The notes: generated by a model not told the origin, from the sequence alone. Numbered from the stretch's first letter, positions 3,475-34,656 are shown. The stretch: DNA of 64,000 nt from Blastocladiella emersonii ATCC 22665 (GCA_025594325.1 JANHCV010000001.1:1798001-1862000), one strand, 5' to 3'. Numbers and translations: made by a program.

Positions 3475-6400
3475 ATGATGGTCACCCCGGCCAATGGCAG
3501 CGGCGGCGGCGGGAACCCGGCACCGAATCGCGGGCCCTCGCCGCAGCAGAACGGCGGCGAGTACCACCAGCGGACCCCGTCCGGGTCCCGACGGCAGCAA
3601 CAGCAGCAGCAACAGCAGCAGCAGCAGTCGAACCGGCTCATCAACCTCGCCGACTACGTCCAGGACAAGGTCATTGGCAGCGGCTCGTTTGGCCGGATCT
3701 GCAAGGTGCACCGGATCTCGGACGGCATGGTGCGTGCGTGTGCGACGGCCGGCCGGCGGCCAACGTCCCTTCCATCGCGGCCGCGACCACCGACCGAGCT
3801 CACCCACCACCCTCCACCACCACCTCCACCTCCGCCTCGGATCGTCTAGGTCATGGCCCGCAAGGAGATCATGTACGACCGGATGAAGCAAAAGGAGCGG
3901 ACGCAGCTGGTGCAGGAGGTCAACATCCTGCGCGAGCTGAACCACCCGCACATCGTCAAGTACCACGGCCGCATCGTGGACCGCAACAACTACATCATGT
4001 ACATCATGATGGAGTACTGCGAGGGCGGCGACCTGTCGATTGTCGTCAAGCGCCACAAGCAGTCGCGCGCGCTCATCCCCGAGGCCACCGTGTGGGGCTA
4101 CCTCGCGCAGCTCGCCGCCGCGCTGCACGAGTGCCACTACCTCCACGGCCAGCGCAAGGCCTCCCCCGGCGGCGCCATCCTGCACCGCGACATCAAGCCC
4201 GACAACGTGTTCCTCGACGCCGACAATAACGCCAAGCTCGGCGACTTCGGCCTCAGCACGCTCCTCGGCGAGTCCGAGAACAACTTTGCCCGCACGTTTG
4301 TCGGGACGCCCTACTACATGAGCCCGGTACGCATCTCGCGTCGCGAGATTTGCTGAGGGCATCGACTGACCTCCGCCTCGCCCGCGTCTCGCCCGCACAC
4401 GCGTGTAGGAGGTCGTCAACTCGAAAGAGTACAACGAGAAGAGCGACATCTGGTCTCTCGGCTGCCTGACCTACGAGCTCTGCGCCCTCTCGTATGATTT
4501 AACCTTCACCCCACACGCGTCGCCACGCACTGACCCCGCGCCCCGCCCGCATCTAGCCCACCATTCGACGGCAAGGACCACGCCGAGCTGCACCGCAACA
4601 TCCTGAACGTGCGGTACTCGGACATCCCGAGCGGCTACTCGCGCACCATGCGCGCCATCATCTCGCGCATGCTGCAGTTCGACCCCGGCGCCCGGCCCTC
4701 GGCCGGCGAGCTCCTCGAGCACCCGCGCGTCGCCCTAGCCTTCGAGACGCGCCAGGCCGAGACCACGCTGGCCCGCCGCGATCGCGACCTCGCGCGACGG
4801 ACCAGCTCGCTCGAACGCCGCGAGAACGAGGTTGCTAGGCGCGAGGCCGGGATCGTCGGCCGCGAGGAGGCTGTCACCGCGCAGGAGGCCCGGATCGCCG
4901 AGCGCGAGGCGGCGGTTCAGCGCGCAGCCGAGGAAAATGCGTCGACGCGATCCGCACTCGGTACGATTCCCGAGAAAGGACTGCACCGCGCCGGGTCCGA
5001 GCTCACCCAACCCCCTGGCACGCGTGTGTAGAGGAGGAGCGCCAGAAACTCATCAACGCCCGCACCGAGCTGCAGGCGTTCCAGGCGCAGCTTGAGCAGC
5101 GGCACCGCGACTTGCAGGACGAGATCGCCGCCGCGCACGTTGAGGTGCACAAGCGGCGCGAGGAGCTCGACCAGCGGCAACGCGACCTCGATCATCGGCA
5201 AGGTGAGCTCGACCAGCGCCAGGAGTCGATGACCCAGGAGTACCGCCGGTTCGAGCTTTACCAGCAACAGCAGCAGCAGCAGCGGATCATGGATTCTAAA
5301 CCGTTCTCACCACCCAGCCATCCGCAGCCGCTCCACCACCACCACCACCAGTACCAGCAACCGCCACCATCCCACCACGTCGCACCCGCTGCCGCCCACG
5401 CGACCACGCCCGCCGCGGGCCAGCCGCCGTCGGAGCTGCGTGACTTCCAGTTCCGCCAGCCGAGCGCCAACGGCGCCACCGTCGACATGGCGTGGACCCC
5501 GACGCCCGCCGCGACGAGCGGCCCGCCACCACCGCAGCAGCAGCCGCACTCGGAGCCGCCGCAGTACCAGCGCACGCCCTACCCTGGCAGTGACGCCAGT
5601 GGCGGCGTCCAGTTCCCGCAGTCCCTCCCGCGTATGCCGTCGTCGAACCCGCTGCGGCAGCAGGCCTTCTCCAACAACGGGGCCCAGCAGCAACAGCTGC
5701 AGGCACCCACATCCGCATCGTCGTACGCCGAGTTTGCGCGGCAGCAGGCGCGGCTGCACGCCAGCAGCTCCGCGGCCGCGGTTACCCCGTCGCCGGCCGC
5801 GTTCCAGCCGCCGCTCCAAGCGCCGCACTCGGCGCCCGCCGCGTCGTCGTCCTCCTCCTCGTCGGTCACGCCGATCGTCAAGCTGGATCAACGCGGCAAC
5901 CGCGTCATTGACCACACGCACCACCAGCACCACTACCAGCAGCAGCAACAGCAGCAGCAGCGCAACGACGACCACGGGTTCCGCACGCCCACGACGCCGG
6001 CGTCGCGGATGCAGGCGGAAAGCGCGGGTAGCGGCGGGCTCCGCCGCGCGGTGCTCTCGGCGGGTGGCCGGTCGGGTGGATCCACCAACACCGGCGGGAG
6101 CAGCAGCAGCAACGCGTACATCGGCACCCCGCGGCCATCCGCCGGCGCGCTCATGCTCGGCCCGTTCCAGCAGCAACATCAGCAGCAGAACGCGTTTGTG
6201 CCACCTCATCCGCGCTCGGCCCCGTCGACGGGCGGCACCTCCGCGCCCGCGGCGACGCCCGGGACCACGGGGACCATCGACAACATGGCGTCGACGCTCG
6301 CGCGCATGGACATTTCGCCGTCGCCCGCGATGCCGAACGGCACGCTGTACGGCCGCCCGACGTCCGCGAGCGCGGCAACGGGCCGGCCCACGTTCGCGCC

Positions 6401-29101: not shown

Positions 29102-30391
29102 TCAACCGCCAGGGTCAGGATAAACATCAGCGCCTGCGTGTAGCGATCCTTCACTCGCGATGGCCGACTGAATTGGGACGCCGGTCCGCTGGCCTCGGCC
29201 TTGCTCGCCGGCCGGCTCCTTGCTCGTGGCCATGGCCATGGTCGCGGTCGCCGCCGGCTCGTGGACCGTGACGCCGGCGCCCATCGTGATGAACTGGCTC
29301 GCCGAGTTGCGCCGTTGCCGAGACCGGCGCGTGTTGAACTGGACGAGCCGCTCGAAACTTCCTTCAATGAGGATCGCGAAGCCCGCGACCAGCGTGCGCA
29401 GCGGTCCGTAGTTGAGCGGGAGCGGGCCGTTCGTAGCCGTGATGTACGCGAACGCGCTCCACTCGACGACCATGAGCATGCTGAGGACAACGAACGTGTT
29501 GCTCAGCGGGTACGCCGTCTGACCCGCCTGGTGCTGCGACGAATTCGATCCGCGGACCGGCGACAGGGACGGCGAGCCAGACGACGACACCTGCGACCCG
29601 GAATCGAGGTGTTGCGACGACGCGAACTTGAACGACGCAACCGACTTGGTAATGGCGACCGCGCTGAGCCGCGCTCCGCCCGCGCCCTTGATCTCGGCCG
29701 CCGCAGCACGGGCGGAGCGGATGGCAGCCGCGGCAGCGGCCTTCGCAGCGGCGGCCCTGCTCTCTCGGCGGCGATGGCCGAACGCGACCTTGAGCGACCA
29801 CACGGTCCCCGCGAAGCACGTCACGGGGACGATGGCCAAGCCGGCGCCGACCCAGTCTGCAGCGAGCGGCGCCGCAACCCATTCGTGGAGCGGCGCGTTG
29901 CGACGGATGAGATCGAGCAGTATTGTGAGGCCACCGACGATGCCAACGACCCAGATCAGAAAGCACATGGCCGCGACGACGCGCAGGAACCGCTTGCGGC
30001 CTTCGGGACGCTCCATGACGATCAACACGCATCGCTGGCCAATGGCGAGGGTCAGCAGCGGGCCGACGCACGGGAAGAACGTCAGCCGCACGGCGCGAAA
30101 CGCGAGTACGTTGGGCTCGCGCGTGATCCACAGATTGAGAAAGTAGACGGCCGAGTTGATGCTCTCGAACAGCAAAAACAGCGCAGCGAGAAAGAGGACG
30201 CGACAGCGCATGACCATGAACGCCATGGCCGAGTCGCCCGGGATGAAGCGACCGATGGTCGGGAACGCGCGGCGCGCAAGGTAGCCGAGAACGAACACAT
30301 CCAGGGCCAAGGAGAGCGCGGCCACGACCACCGTGTTGACCGCGATCCGGTCCTCGATCAACGCGGGCATGAATCCATTGCTAGTAGTCAT
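29102..30391 (-). CDS. Orphan seven-transmembrane (GPCR-like) protein
   Basis: Intronless 429 aa ORF with seven hydrophobic segments, QRC at the end of TM3, a long basic/Ser-rich loop between TM5 and TM6, and a polar C-tail. Confidence 0.6.
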   Translation of the reverse strand: MTTSNGFMPALIEDRIAVNTVVVAALSLALDVFVLGYLARRAFPTIGRFIPGDSAMAFMVMRCRVLFLAALFLLFESINSAVYFLNLWITREPNVLAFRAVRLTFFPCVGPLLTLAIGQRCVLIVMERPEGRKRFLRVVAAMCFLIWVVGIVGGLTILLDLIRRNAPLHEWVAAPLAADWVGAGLAIVPVTCFAGTVWSLKVAFGHRRRESRAAAAKAAAAAAIRSARAAAAEIKGAGGARLSAVAITKSVASFKFASSQHLDSGSQVSSSGSPSLSPVRGSNSSQHQAGQTAYPLSNTFVVLSMLMVVEWSAFAYITATNGPLPLNYGPLRTLVAGFAILIEGSFERLVQFNTRRSRQRRNSASQFITMGAGVTVHEPAATATMAMATSKEPAGEQGRGQRTGVPIQSAIASEGSLHAGADVYPDPGG

Positions 30392-30606: not shown

Positions 30607-33600
30607 CTACTGGCCATGGACAAACCGCTGGGCCGTGGCCTTGAGCGGGCCCTCGATGGTCGTAGTCCCGTCGCCGAACACGCCCGTGGCCTGCATCTTC
30701 CACTGCGACGCGGCCGCGCCCTCGGTCCCGCTGCGCGACAGCACGGCCATCATCACGGACCGCGACTGGCCCGCCTCGTCCTCGGTGAACGTGTAGCTCG
30801 CCAGCTCGCCCTCGGCCACGTTGGTGCCGTCTGCAAGCCGGATGAACGGGTCGCGCACCGCGGACAGCGCCGTCGTGTAACCCGTCATAAAGAAGGCGAG
30901 GTGCACGATCTCGCGCGGCGGCTTGCCGAGGTCAATGTTGATGCGGTGCGTGCCCTCCTTCTTGGCGTGGTCCACAATGTCGCCACTGTGCCGCACGGCG
31001 CCGTTGCCGCGGATCGAGCACGTGTTGTTCCACTTGATGTGCTCGAGCGAGTTGCCCTGCGCATCGAGGAGGAGCACCGACGCGTCGAGGAAGATGGTGC
31101 TGTCGGTCGGGTACCGCCACGTCTCCTCGACAGCCACCAGCGAGAGGTTGGGCGGCACCGTATACGACTCGCCGCGCAGCAGGATCTTGGACACGCCGCT
31201 GCTCTGCACCTTGGCAAAGTCGGTACGCCGCGTGTGGTACCCCTTGGCGAGCGATGCATGCACGGCCTTGTGCCACGCGCGCGTCGCCTGCACCGGCGAC
31301 AGCGGCGTGACCGCGACCGATTTGTACCACGCGCCCCAGTGCGGCGTCGCGTCGAGAATGGACCGGATCCCGCGCTGGATGCGCGCCGACACGCGCGCGG
31401 GCAGCTTGCCGTACAGCACGTCGGCGGTCAGCGCCATTTCCGTGACCGACTTGATGGGCGCGCCGTCCTGCCCGCCGAGGCCGCGATGCTCGCGCAGGAA
31501 CAGCGCGTGGAACGCGAACAGGCGGCGCGACACGGCCGACGACTCGAACGCGGCGTCGAGCAGCGCCGTGTCGGCCTTGGTCGGCGGCTTGCCGAGCGGG
31601 ACCGCCTGCCACGTCTTGACGACGGCCGGGTTCGCCTTGCCGAGCCATAGGACGGCGCGTGCCATGCTCTCCGAAATGAGCGCCGGCGCAAGGTCGCGCC
31701 ACGCGTACCGCTCGCTGACCGACAGCAGCGCGACGAGATCGCCGAGACTCGGCTCCGCGCCCTTGCTCCGCGCGTCCTCGCCGCCGTCGATGAACCGCGC
31801 GAGCCGCCGCTCGACTTCAGCCTGCAGCCGCGGGTACCGGTGCATGCAGGCGACCCACACGCGGTGGACCTGCGTGTACATCTCGACGGCGGCGTCGGAC
31901 GCGTACATTCCGCGGTCGGCGAGGAGCACGGCGCACGTGTTGAGCAGCTTGGGGAACACCTCGAGGATCATGCGCGGCGCGAACAGCGGCGCCGTGTCGC
32001 CCTTCTCGGCGGCGAGGGACGTGATGAACTCGCGCACGGCCGGCCACGCGCGGTTGAAGTGCTCCTGCGTGAGGTACGCGGGCAGCCAGAACGCGAATGC
32101 GCGGCGGTCCTCGGGCGTGCGGCGGACGCCGAGGTCGCGGAACGCCGTCTGCGACAGCCAAGCGAGCGTCGGCACCGCGTAGTCGAGCTTGCGCGTGCGC
32201 GGGTTCCACGTCGCCTCGACGGGGAAGCCCAGCACGTCGTCAGCAAACGGCACGCGCGTGTACCAGCAGCGCAGGTCGCGTGCCGCGTTGTTGTGCTCGG
32301 CCAGGTACGCGTACCGCCAGTTGGTCGTGTCCTCGCTCGCCGCGCCCGACGCCGCGTACGCTGGCCGGAACCGGCGCCAGACCTCGGCCGCCTGCGCGAC
32401 GCCGTGGAGCCAGCGGCACGCGCCGCCGAATGCGATGAGCGCGCGCGGGTCCGTGTCGCCCAGAACCTGCAGCAGCACCTCGGTGGGCAGGAGGCCGAGA
32501 CGGCCGGCTTTGGTGGGGTCGACAGCGGAAGACTGCTTGGCCGCCACTGGAGCCGCGGCCGGCGCGACCGTTTCGGCGACGACGGGCTTGGTCGAGGCGT
32601 TGGCCGGGAGGCCGTACTGCGCGGCCTTGGACGGCAGGATGTGGCGGACGTGGGCGACCGAGGACAGGGTCAGCACGCGCAACTTGGGCTTTTCGAGCTG
32701 CTGCTGGTCCTTGGCGACGCTGACAGGCGCCGCGACCGGCGCGGGGGCCGACGGTGGGGCAGCGACGGGCTTCTTGGTGGCGGCGTACACCTGGTCGAGG
32801 ACCGACTGGTGCGGGTGCGCGTTGGCGCGCGTGACGAGCGTCCACCCGTCGGCGAGGCGCATCCGGGTACCGCGGGCGTAGGCGACGGGCTTCTGCGGAC
32901 CCGCACCAGCGCCACTGCCGCTCGCGCCGTTGAGCGTGCGCGCATACTCGGCCTGGAGTCGACGGACCATGCCGAGCTGCTCGAGGACCGTCTTGGGCAT
33001 CTCGGGCACGGCCTGCGCGCCGCCCGCCGCCGCGGTCACGGCGTGGCGGCCCTTGGTGGAGGAGGTAGAGCCGGGAAGGGCAGGAAACGGCGCCGAGGCC
33101 GAGTGCCCGCAGGCCGAGCACTGGAACTCGGCGGCCGCCGCGGCCGCGGCCCGAACGCCGGCCTCGTCGTCCGACGCGCCCTCCTCGAGACGCGAGTCCC
33201 ACAGGAACGCCTGCAGCTGCATGAGGACCGAGCGCACCGAGTACGCCGAACTCCACCCGGCGCCCGCGGTCATCTTGTCCGGGTCTGTATCGCATACGAA
33301 GGAGCAAGTGAGTGACTTGTTTCGCTAAACGTGGAGCAAAGGACGGAACGTACCAGTCTCGAACATGTCGAGGCACACACGATGCTCGGCGCCGTGACGG
33401 TGCACGTTAGGGTGCTGCGGGAGACCCGTGCACAGCGCGACCTGGGGCGGCGCGGCCGGATACGCAGCCGGGAACCGCACGACCGCGTGCCACACGGTCC
33501 CGCGAAGCGGCTCGACCGCGAGATCCGCGGGCCCGCGCAGGTTCGCGTGCCACTCGAACAGGTTGCTGCCGCCGTCACCCTCGACGGGAGTGGCCGCGAC

Positions 33601-33717
33601 GTGCTCGAGCGGCGCCGACTGCAGCTCCTTGAGATCCCACATGAGCCGCTTGACGGCCACCTGGCTCGCCGACGTCGCCGCCGAGGACTTCTTCTTGGAG
33701 CCGGTGGAGCCGATCAT
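30607..33717 (-). CDS. Multidomain protein: UBC (E2) - CxxC - F-box - helical domain - TerD-like domain
   Basis: Exon 1: KRLMWDLKEL, NLFEWHANL.GP, FPAAYP..PP, HPNV...VCLDMF (catalytic Cys). Exon 2: GWSSAYSVRSVLMQLQAFL, FQCSACGH, F-box-like LGLLPTEVLLQVLGDTDPRALIAFGGACRWL, and C-terminal FLDASVLLLD...AVRHSGD...HRINIDL...LAFFM...WKMQATG. One intron at about 33283-33354. Confidence 0.8.
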
Positions 33718-34108
33718 GGTGCGGGAAGAGTGGTTCGAGGAGACGCGAGGCCGGGGAGGTCGAGGGGTCGAGTTGGCTGCGGTGGAGAGCAGCCGAGACA
33801 CACAGATCGACCACGGCGGCGTGGGGGCGCCCCGGCCTTTTATTGGGCGATTTGCATCAAGTCACGCCCGCCGCTGCTGTGTCATTTGGGATTCATCGTA
33901 CTGAGGGGCGTAATAGCGTGAGCGGAGGCGCGCGGAAGGGTGACGCGGCAGTGACTTGGACGCGTCGCCGCGTGTGGCTTGCAACGCGAGACACTGGACG
34001 CGTGGGCACGTGGAGCTTGCAGATCAACCACGTGCCGCGTGCGAGACGCGTTTGGAGACAATTCAACTTGACGTGGCTCGATACTGTTCTGGCATCATCG
34101 GCGGCTAG

Positions 34109-34656
34109 ATCAAGCAATCAATAACTTTTTTAACAACAAACGTGTCGCAGTGCGTTGTTTCTGAGACCATCACGACTACTATCGTCACGTCCCAGTCAAG
34201 CGCTTCTTTTTCGACCACCGCTTCGCACTCGCTTCCGACCTCAACCGTCTCTACCACTCGCTCTTCGTCGCTGCCGACCACTACCGCCTCGGCCACCTCG
34301 TCGTCGACCTCGACGCAAACCTCGGCCGCCCCTACAACAAACACGAACGGTCCGCCTGCAACCAACACCAACGGTGCCCAGACGACGACTAAACGAATGG
34401 TCGTCCGACTACTGCTTCTACCACAACCTTGACTACGACCACCACCGCGACGGTACCCGGCGGGGGTCGGCCGTCGACCACGACCACGTTTGCGGCGTGG
34501 CCCGTCGTCGCGGTCAGTCTCGTTGCGGTGCTGGCCGCGGTGGGTCTCTTCGTCGCTCGCCGCCGCCGCCGCCACCGTTGCCAGGCTCAGCGCGACGTCG
34601 AGTACGCGCAGCTCGAGGCGCCGGTCGAGGTGCCCGCTGCTCCCCTCCTCTCGTAA
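34109..34656 (+). pseudogene. Thr/Ser-rich single-pass membrane protein reading frame with an apparent 1-nt frameshift
   Basis: A T/S-rich frame (34109-34392) with TNTNG repeats continues in another frame as TNGRPTTAST...AAWPVVAVSLVAVLAAVGLFVARRRRR. The 5' end or signal peptide was not found. Confidence 0.45.

What the first reader, a model, noticed from the sequence alone, without database searches (positions are those of the whole stretch)
30607..33717. E2 (UBC) - F-box - TerD fusion in one polypeptide
Seen: two exons join an E2 domain with an intact HPN...C active site to a CxxC segment, an F-box-like motif, an approximately 350 aa unassigned helical domain and a C-terminal TerD-like domain. 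The TerD acidic Ca2+ loops look degenerate (FLDAS for DLDAS; HSGDIVDHAKKEGTHRI lacks the GDDE motif). Established: E2s and F-box proteins normally act as separate SCF components, and TerD domains belong to bacterial Ter stress-response systems with sporadic eukaryotic fusions. Inference: a self-contained E2/E3-like ubiquitylation machine that could dock on Skp1-Cul1 and bring its own E2, with a TerD sensor or substrate module. I recall UBC proteins with a similar middle domain, but not this full combination.
Basis: partly seen in the sequence, partly recalled or inferred. Interest (0 to 1): 0.72.

Follow-up and report, generated by a model that had tools for sequence, protein, structure and literature searches.

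The report
E2 enzyme fused to UBR4-like ligase
This water-fungus gene encodes one protein that combines a ubiquitin-carrying enzyme (E2), an F-box, a ligase (E3) module shaped like that of the giant ligase UBR4, and a remodelled bacterial-type TerD domain; it belongs to a widespread eukaryotic family that I could not find described in the papers searched.

Summary
Window 30607-33717 (minus strand) is an intact two-exon gene, identical to the 1013-aa Blastocladiella emersonii protein H9P43_000669. Pfam scores UQ_con, F-box-like and TerD all above their cut-offs.

Two points change the reading.

1. The "unassigned helical domain" can be assigned. A confident model (pLDDT 93) matches the UBR4 E3 module (hemiRING plus UZI) at Z 22 and yeast Ubr1 RING plus cap-helical region at Z 12. 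The next match is below Z 5. Its first ~70 residues look like a RING/U-box without the zinc ligands. The protein therefore carries both an E2 and an E2-binding E3 module.

2. The combination is not unique. A profile of this module finds 1529 cluster representatives. The same domain order occurs in chytrids, Orbilia, amoebae, algae, ferns and a lycophyte.

The TerD site is remodelled across the family ([FY]LDA[ST], HSGD, GxH), not decayed.

I read it as a built-in E2-E3 hybrid ligase. Docking of the E2 on its own E3 module, Skp1 binding and the TerD role are inferred. No paper I could search describes the family. No RNA run was listed.

The parts
30607..33717 (-). Whole coding region, two exons, 1013 codons plus stop (stop at 30607-30609)
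   Evidence: ORF list and sequence. Translation is identical to P0001, H9P43_000669 of Blastocladiella emersonii ATCC 22665.
33285..33353 (-). 69-nt intron, GT..AG, phase 1 (splits codon 122)
   Evidence: Sequence read. Read-through gives a stop. Orthologues align without a break across the junction. No RNA run was listed.
33124..33675 (-). UBC (E2) core, residues about 15-175, spanning the intron. HPN is at 33406-33414 and the catalytic Cys115 at 33373-33375.
   Evidence: Pfam UQ_con 64 bits. PDB E2s reach E 6e-15. The AF2 model matches whole E2 chains at Z 16-17 with 137-150 residues aligned. In the family, Cys is kept in 56 of 65 and the His of HPN in 62 of 65.
33103..33120 (-). CxxCxH motif (C177, C180, H182) directly after the last UBC helix
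   Evidence: Kept in 54, 57 and 54 of 65 relatives. Modelled with pLDDT 93-95, packed onto the UBC core. Zinc binding is inferred only.
32842..32850 (-). DGW motif (residues 267-269) within the low-complexity linker (about 233-382)
   Evidence: W269 is invariant in 14 distant family members although the linker is otherwise unalignable. Function unknown.
32368..32493 (-). F-box-like domain, residues 386-427
   Evidence: Pfam PF12937 scores 24.7-25.0 bits (cut-off 24.3) here. It scores 31-43 bits in P0007, P0011, P0012 and P0018 (20.8-26.7 in P0008, P0026 and P0089), and PF00646 also matches in several. The family consensus shows LPxExL...W.
32065..32286 (-). RING/U-box-like subdomain without a visible zinc-ligand set, residues about 455-528
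   Evidence: Model residues 20-93 align to the UBR4 hemiRING (chain residues from 4832). On their own they also hit U-box and RING domains (Prp19, TRAF6, TRIM56, CTLH; Z about 4). C461 is kept in 121 of 122; G474, P523 and H530 in 122 of 122.
31204..32064 (-). UZI-like helical subdomain, residues about 529-815
   Evidence: AF2 model with pLDDT 93.1 and pTM 0.91. Matches: 8b5w Z 22.3 and 8btl_A Z 22.0 (307 aligned, rmsd 4.2), 7mey_A Ubr1 residues 1218-1643 Z 12.2, next best below 5. Foldseek gives E 7e-5, probability 1.00.
30610..31203 (-). TerD-type domain, residues 816-1013, with a remodelled binding site (F853-L-D855-A-S, H887-S-G-D890, G899-x-H901)
   Evidence: Pfam TerD 52 bits (cut-off 25.3). 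3IBZ at E 1.5e-8. In 80 relatives H887 is kept in 100%, S888 in 97%, G889 and D890 in 98%, H901 in 95% and D855 in 92%. It is the only TerD match in this genome.

Best explanation
The gene encodes a single-chain E2-E3 hybrid ubiquitin ligase of a conserved, uncharacterised eukaryotic family.

Shown here:
- A complete UBC fold with HPN and the catalytic Cys115, followed by a conserved CxxCxH tail.
- A long disordered linker.
- An F-box.
- A module with the fold of the UBR4/UBR1 E3 module: a RING/U-box-like part packed on an 11-helix-type UZI bundle.
- A TerD beta-sandwich directly after it, in which the calcium motifs are replaced by a conserved His/Asp set.

Inferred:
- After charging by E1, the N-terminal E2~ubiquitin swings on the linker and docks on the RING-like face of its own E3 module, or on that of a partner molecule. 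This would mirror how UBE2A docks on the UBR4 hemiRING-UZI.
- The E3 module then promotes transfer of ubiquitin to a protein held nearby.
- The TerD domain, rigidly joined to the UZI bundle, is the likeliest substrate- or ligand-recognition element.
- The F-box recruits Skp1, either as an adaptor or regulator or to bring the enzyme to a cullin scaffold.
For: - Domain calls.
- Full UBC fold and confident CxxCxH packing.
- Catalytic residues kept here and in most relatives.
- The middle domain matches the UBR4 E3 module at Z 22.0-22.3 over 307 of about 350 residues and Ubr1 at Z 12.2, with nothing else above 5.
- The UBR4 module is experimentally an E2-binding, E2~Ub-activating unit, and the UZI fold is reported only for UBR1-4: PMC10873205.
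- The middle module is the most conserved part of the protein (82% mean column identity among Blastocladiomycota) and has four (near-)invariant residues in the RING-like part.
- The same domain order is found in distant eukaryotes, including transcript-derived ORFs from Protostelium and MMETSP.
- An ESM Atlas cluster carries UQ_con 98%, TerD 82% and F-box-like 69%.
- Skp1 genes exist in this genome.
Against: - There is no sequence-level link to UBR4 or UBR1: no Pfam PF13764 hit and no PDB sequence hit, with 8% identity in the structural alignment.
- The four zinc ligands of the hemiRING are not recognisable, so E2 binding by the RING-like part is unproven.
- Nothing here shows that the E2 docks on its own E3 module.
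- About one in seven relatives lacks the catalytic Cys (Ser or Ala in the sampled green-lineage members). In those lineages the family can work without E2 catalysis.
- The F-box score in this protein is only just over the cut-off.
- There is no expression data for this gene.
Confidence: 0.6

Rival explanations
1. The protein is chiefly an SCF substrate receptor. The F-box docks on Skp1-Cul1-Rbx1, the RING-like/UZI/TerD block only holds the substrate, and the fused UBC works with Rbx1 as a tethered E2.
For: The F-box-like profile matches across the family (31-43 bits in P0007, P0011, P0012 and P0018). Skp1 genes are present in the genome. The E2 is intact.
Against: The block after the F-box has the fold of an E2-recruiting E3 module, not of a known F-box substrate-binding domain. 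Several relatives show no F-box with my family-specific profile yet keep UBC, the middle module and TerD. That profile is narrow, so this is weak evidence. Skp1 binding was not tested.
Confidence: 0.2
2. The RING-like/UZI module is a structural relic that no longer binds an E2. The protein acts as an E3-independent E2 in the manner of UBE2O, or as a scaffold, with UZI and TerD as a binding platform.
For: The hemiRING zinc ligands are missing. Some relatives lack the catalytic Cys. There is no sequence similarity to UBR modules.
Against: U-boxes show that a zinc-free RING fold can still bind an E2 (stated in PMC10873205). The RING-like part holds the most invariant residues of the whole family, which points to a conserved functional surface.
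Confidence: 0.15
3. The fusion is a gene-model artefact: a UBC gene and an F-box/TerD gene wrongly joined.
For: No RNA run could be listed for this gene. In one Geranomyces assembly the locus is annotated as two neighbouring proteins of 209 and 694 aa.
Against: The UBC fold itself spans the intron, with HPN and Cys in exon 1 and the crossover helix in exon 2. The intron has canonical ends and keeps the frame. Full-length single ORFs with the same order come from transcriptomes of other eukaryotes.
Confidence: 0.03

Closest known systems
UBR4 (POE/BIG) C-terminal E3 module: hemiRING plus UZI (PDB 8B5W, 8BTL)
   Same: The whole middle domain superposes at Z 22 with 307 residues aligned. This covers a RING-type subdomain with a long beta-AB-type loop packed on a multi-helix bundle. 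In UBR4 this unit binds UBE2A and activates E2~Ub (PMC10873205).
   Different: Identity is 8% and there is no profile match. The single zinc site of the hemiRING is not recognisable. There is no UBR box or any other UBR4 region. Here the module is internal and followed by TerD, not C-terminal, and an E2 is part of the same chain.
Yeast Ubr1 RING plus cap-helical domain (PDB 7MEY)
   Same: Second-best fold match, Z 12.2 over residues 1218-1643. It is the same RING-on-helical-bundle arrangement and serves a Rad6-type E2.
   Different: Ubr1 has a full two-zinc RING, a UBR box and a separate E2. No sequence similarity was detected.
E2/E3 hybrid enzymes UBE2O and BIRC6 (from general knowledge)
   Same: One polypeptide carries a UBC domain together with the elements that select substrates, so it acts without a separate E3.
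   Different: Those proteins have no RING-UZI module, F-box or TerD. The relationship is limited to the UBC fold.
F-box proteins of SCF ligases
   Same: An F-box-like motif with the LPxE...W pattern.
   Different: Classical F-box proteins carry WD40, LRR or similar substrate-binding domains and no E2 or RING-type module.
Bacterial TerD proteins (for example Streptomyces 3IBZ)
   Same: The same domain family (Pfam 52 bits; E 1.5e-8 to 3IBZ).
   Different: The first Asp of DxD is aromatic and the acidic GDDE stretch is replaced by G-x-H. HSGD is invariant across the family. The domain is fused to ubiquitin machinery instead of sitting in a ter operon.

Membership tests
UBC / E2 (PF00179) | Profile score above the curated cut-off | tested here: met
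   64.2 bits against a cut-off of 27. Exon 1 alone scores 49.1 bits.
UBC / E2 (PF00179) | HPN motif and catalytic cysteine | tested here: met
   H102-P103-N104 and C115.
UBC / E2 (PF00179) | Complete UBC fold | tested here: met
   The model matches whole E2 chains at Z 16-17 with 137-150 residues aligned. Rad6, Ubc9, UBE2G and UBE2D are tied.
UBC / E2 (PF00179) | Forms a ubiquitin thioester | not testable with these tools
   Needs a biochemical assay.
F-box (PF12937 / PF00646) | Profile score above the curated cut-off | tested here: met
   24.7-25.0 bits against a cut-off of 24.3 here, which is marginal. P0007, P0011, P0012 and P0018 score 31-43 bits; P0026 and P0089 score about 26.6; P0008 scores 20.8, below the cut-off.
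F-box (PF12937 / PF00646) | Binds Skp1 | not tested
   Skp1 genes are present.
TerD (PF02342) | Profile score above the curated cut-off | tested here: met
   51.9-52.1 bits against a cut-off of 25.3. 3IBZ at E 1.5e-8.
TerD (PF02342) | Acidic calcium-binding motifs (DxD...S and GDN...GDDE) | tested here: not met
   The motifs read FLDAS and HSGD...G-T-H, with no GDDE. The same replacement is seen in 80 relatives.
UBR-type RING-UZI E3 module | Fold of the RING-type subdomain packed on the UZI helical bundle | tested here: met
   Z 22.3 and 22.0 to UBR4, Z 12.2 to Ubr1, next best below 5. Foldseek probability 1.00.
UBR-type RING-UZI E3 module | Zinc ligands of the RING or hemiRING | tested here: not met
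   Only C461 and H530 are conserved Cys/His residues in this part. No CxxC...HxxC set is present.
UBR-type RING-UZI E3 module | Sequence-profile relationship (PF13764 or UBR sequences) | tested here: not met
   No Pfam hit at E up to 10. There is no UBR hit in PDB sequence searches with the 5- and 122-sequence profiles.
UBR-type RING-UZI E3 module | Binds and activates an E2 | tested here: inconclusive
   The complex prediction gave no answer. A binding or discharge assay is needed.
UBR N-recognins | UBR box | tested here: not met
   No UBR-box family appears in the Pfam scan of the whole protein.

The most novel reading that the evidence does not exclude
This family is an unrecognised branch of RING-UZI ubiquitin ligases, older than or parallel to UBR1-4, in which the E2 is built into the chain. 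The remodelled His/Asp pocket of its TerD domain binds a metal or a small nucleotide-like signal that switches the ligase on or selects its substrate. That would make it a ligand-gated, self-contained E2-E3 machine, derived in part from a bacterial stress-response domain.
Probability: 0.2. Interest if true: 0.85.

Novelty: new variant of a known kind. Interest (0 to 1): 0.7.

Why it matters
E2 and E3 activities are normally on separate proteins, and the UZI fold has been reported only in the UBR1-4 N-degron ligases. A compact protein of about 1000 residues with a built-in E2, a zinc-free RING-UZI module, an F-box and a TerD domain would be a new type of hybrid ligase. It would also be far easier to study than the 574-kDa UBR4 as a model for how RING-UZI modules handle E2~ubiquitin.

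It would also give the eukaryotic TerD domain a concrete biochemical setting. The family spans fungi, amoebae, algae and early land plants but has no studied member. In the sampled green-lineage members the catalytic Cys is replaced by Ser or Ala, which gives a natural comparison of active and inactive forms.

Tried and rejected
- Complex prediction of the UBC-CxxCxH part against the middle module returned "no answer" (score 0.00, alignments not used). It counts neither for nor against docking.
- The RNA-run search listed none, so the splice has no read support and read laying was not used.
- The second word-based homologue search, with the 14-sequence profile, returned only the query.
- The protein-atlas feature search of the middle domain gave one sub-threshold hit.
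- A test for a composite zinc site (CxxCxH together with C461/H530) by co-loss was uninformative, because C461 and H530 are never lost.
- PF13764 was not found in this genome, but the control genomes did not ring either, so this shows nothing.
- The 2012 Ter-systems paper (PMC4104200) is not held. I could not check whether it mentions eukaryotic TerD fusions.
- Full-text searches combining TerD with UBC, F-box or ubiquitin-conjugating found nothing relevant.
- Rejected: that the TerD is merely degenerate.
- Rejected: that the architecture is unique to this organism.

Full report
**Gene and organism**

Six-frame ORFs and the minus-strand sequence show a first exon from the ATG at 33717 to 33354. 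It is followed by GTACGT...CAG (intron 33353-33285, 69 nt) and a second exon from 33284 to the stop at 30607-30609. Reading through the intron gives a stop codon after 12 codons.

I searched the exons separately by reference. The word-based search with exon 2 returned a 100% identical 1013-aa database protein, H9P43_000669 of Blastocladiella emersonii ATCC 22665 (P0001). From then on I used that record by its id.

The only place where I joined the exons myself was an equality check inside a script, which confirmed that the two-exon translation equals P0001. No self-joined sequence was sent to any search.

No RNA run could be listed, so the splice rests on four points:
- Canonical intron ends and a kept reading frame.
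- The UBC fold spans the junction.
- Orthologues align without a break across it.
- Transcript-derived full-length relatives exist in other eukaryotes.

The gene is single-copy, and its TerD is the only TerD match in the 32.7-Mb assembly.

Pfam gives all three named domains above their curated cut-offs:

| Domain | Residues | Bits | Cut-off |
|---|---|---|---|
| UQ_con | 24-163 | 64.2 | 27 |
| F-box-like | 386-427 | 24.7 | 24.3 |
| TerD | 833-989 | 51.9 | 25.3 |

HPN (102-104) and Cys115 align with the HPN and catalytic Cys of UBE2D1.

A model of residues 1-235, built on 65 relatives (pLDDT 83.9), has a full UBC core. It matches complete E2 chains at Z 16-17. Rad6/UBE2A, Ubc9, UBE2G and UBE2D are tied, so no subfamily can be named.

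The CxxC segment is really CxxCxH (177-182). It follows the last UBC helix directly, is modelled with pLDDT 93-95, and is kept in 54-57 of 65 relatives. With the unusual, nearly invariant H57 and H77 in the sheet, a zinc-stapled tail is plausible but untested.

The F-box score is marginal here. It is 31-43 bits in P0007, P0011, P0012 and P0018, and lower (20.8-26.7 bits) in P0008, P0026 and P0089.

**TerD domain**

In 80 family TerD domains the replacements are themselves almost invariant:
- An aromatic residue stands before L-D-A-[ST].
- In H-S-G-D, H is kept in 100% and S, G and D in 97-98%.
- In G-x-H, G is kept in 90% and H in 95%.

This is a remodelled pocket under selection, not decay. 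What it binds is unknown. Two His and two Asp suggest a transition metal or a phosphate-bearing ligand; that is inference.

**The middle domain**

This is the most conserved part, with 82% mean column identity among five Blastocladiomycota sequences. It has no Pfam match and no sequence match in the PDB.

A profile search of 1.84 billion cluster representatives found 1529 proteins at E up to 1e-3 and 225 at up to 1e-30. With a 122-sequence alignment, AlphaFold2 gave a very confident model (pLDDT 93.1, pTM 0.91).

Fold-search results:
- Foldseek's only significant hits are the UBR4 E3 module, alone (8B5W, E 7e-5) and bound to UBE2A (8BTL), both at probability 1.00.
- The independent all-against-all aligner gives Z 22.0 for 8BTL_A (307 residues aligned, rmsd 4.2, chain 4832-5183).
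- Yeast Ubr1 residues 1218-1643 score Z 12.2, and everything else is below 5.
- The second-look run gives Z 22.3 and 22.0 for the two UBR4 entries.
- Model residues about 20-93 also match U-box and RING domains on their own at Z about 4.

The UBR4 paper describes this unit as a hemiRING packed on a new helical fold, UZI. It binds UBE2A/B and modestly activates E2~Ub, and a RING-UZI arrangement is also predicted for UBR1-3 (PMC10873205). A plant N-degron review adds only BIG (PMC11668491). Neither paper mentions a UBC-linked family.

In the present family the four hemiRING zinc ligands are not recognisable. Only C461 (121 of 122) and H530 (122 of 122) are conserved Cys/His residues, along with the invariant G474 and P523. 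The subdomain is therefore better called RING/U-box-like.

**Distribution**

Domain HMMs built from the Blastocladiomycota alignment were run on the 154 proteins in hand. UBC, middle module and TerD occurred together in 45 of them. F-box was detectable in 16 of those, even with this narrow profile. UBC plus middle module without TerD occurred in 34 more.

Pfam confirmed UQ_con, F-box-like and TerD in seven of seven distant members tested for the full set, including P0001. In one of them (P0008) the F-box-like score is below the cut-off. It also showed two variants: UBC-S1-module in Alphamonas, and UBC-F-box-module without TerD.

Source names place full-architecture members in these groups:
- Allomyces and the chytrids Rhizophlyctis, Geranomyces and Entophlyctis.
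- The ascomycete Orbilia oligospora.
- The amoebozoan Protostelium.
- The stramenopiles Chattonella and Ectocarpus.
- The green alga Cymbomonas.
- The fern Adiantum and the lycophyte Diphasiastrum.

TerD-less forms occur in Mastigamoeba, Pellita and others. The ESM Atlas holds a cluster with UQ_con 98%, TerD 82% and F-box-like 69%, and a rotifer-rich cluster with UQ_con only.

The architecture is therefore ancient and already present in databases, under names such as "UBC core domain-containing protein" or "hypothetical protein". Five full-text searches found no paper that describes it. The 2012 Ter-systems paper could not be read.

**Mechanism**

Shown here: an intact E2, an F-box, an E3-module fold known to recruit and activate an E2, a remodelled TerD, and their fixed order across eukaryotes.

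Inferred:
- The tethered E2~Ub docks on the RING-like face of the module, in cis or between two molecules.
- TerD, which follows the UZI bundle without a linker, recognises the substrate or a ligand.
- The F-box brings in Skp1.

The one docking prediction gave no answer and is not evidence either way. In UBR4 a helical stretch just before the hemiRING raises E2 affinity. In this family the F-box occupies that position, so it could contribute to E2 handling as well as, or instead of, Skp1 binding. That is speculation.

About one in seven relatives lacks the catalytic Cys. These include the sampled green-lineage members, which carry Ser or Ala. Some lineages therefore use the UBC fold non-catalytically. 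Blastocladiella keeps HPN and Cys.

**Verdict**

It is one member of a widespread family that I could not find studied, so it is not unique to this genome. As a type of ligase it is a new variant of known kinds (E2/E3 hybrids and RING-UZI ligases). Interest is 0.7.

Noticed in passing
window 33960-34055: Three ACGCGT and two CACGTG palindromes sit within about 95 bp, 240-340 bp upstream of the ATG. They lie in the gap shared with the divergent plus-strand ORF that starts near 34142. They resemble MluI cell-cycle-box and E-box sites. An earlier first-reader note (s1-078298) had already flagged them.
   Followed up: partly
P0026, P0033, P0070, P0132 (Ser) and P0042, P0076 (Ala); alignment A5, column of Cys115: The named green-lineage members (the lycophyte Diphasiastrum, the fern Adiantum and the alga Cymbomonas) and a few unnamed relatives have Ser or Ala in place of the catalytic Cys while keeping H..N. 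This suggests a pseudo-E2 form of the family.
   Followed up: partly
P0002-P0005 (Allomyces), alignment A1 columns about 160-165: The Allomyces orthologues have HLN or HFN instead of HPN and carry an insertion before the catalytic Cys. Allomyces macrogynus also has a 511-aa paralogue (P0006) that lacks the UBC and TerD parts.
   Followed up: no
P0145 (Alphamonas edax), residues 330-396: In this family variant an S1 RNA-binding domain (63 bits) sits between the UBC domain and the RING-UZI-like module, where the F-box would be. It has no TerD.
   Followed up: no
window 32842-32850 (residues 267-269): A short DGW motif, with an invariant Trp in 14 distant members, is embedded in an otherwise unalignable low-complexity linker. 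It may be a docking motif.
   Followed up: no
G000 whole genome: A six-frame search with PF13764 (the UBR4 E3 region) found nothing in this genome. None of the control genomes matched either, so absence of UBR4 is not shown.
   Followed up: partly
window 29102-30391 (-): A 429-aa ORF rich in hydrophobic segments lies just downstream of the gene. An earlier first-reader note calls it a 7TM receptor-like gene. I did not examine it.
   Followed up: no
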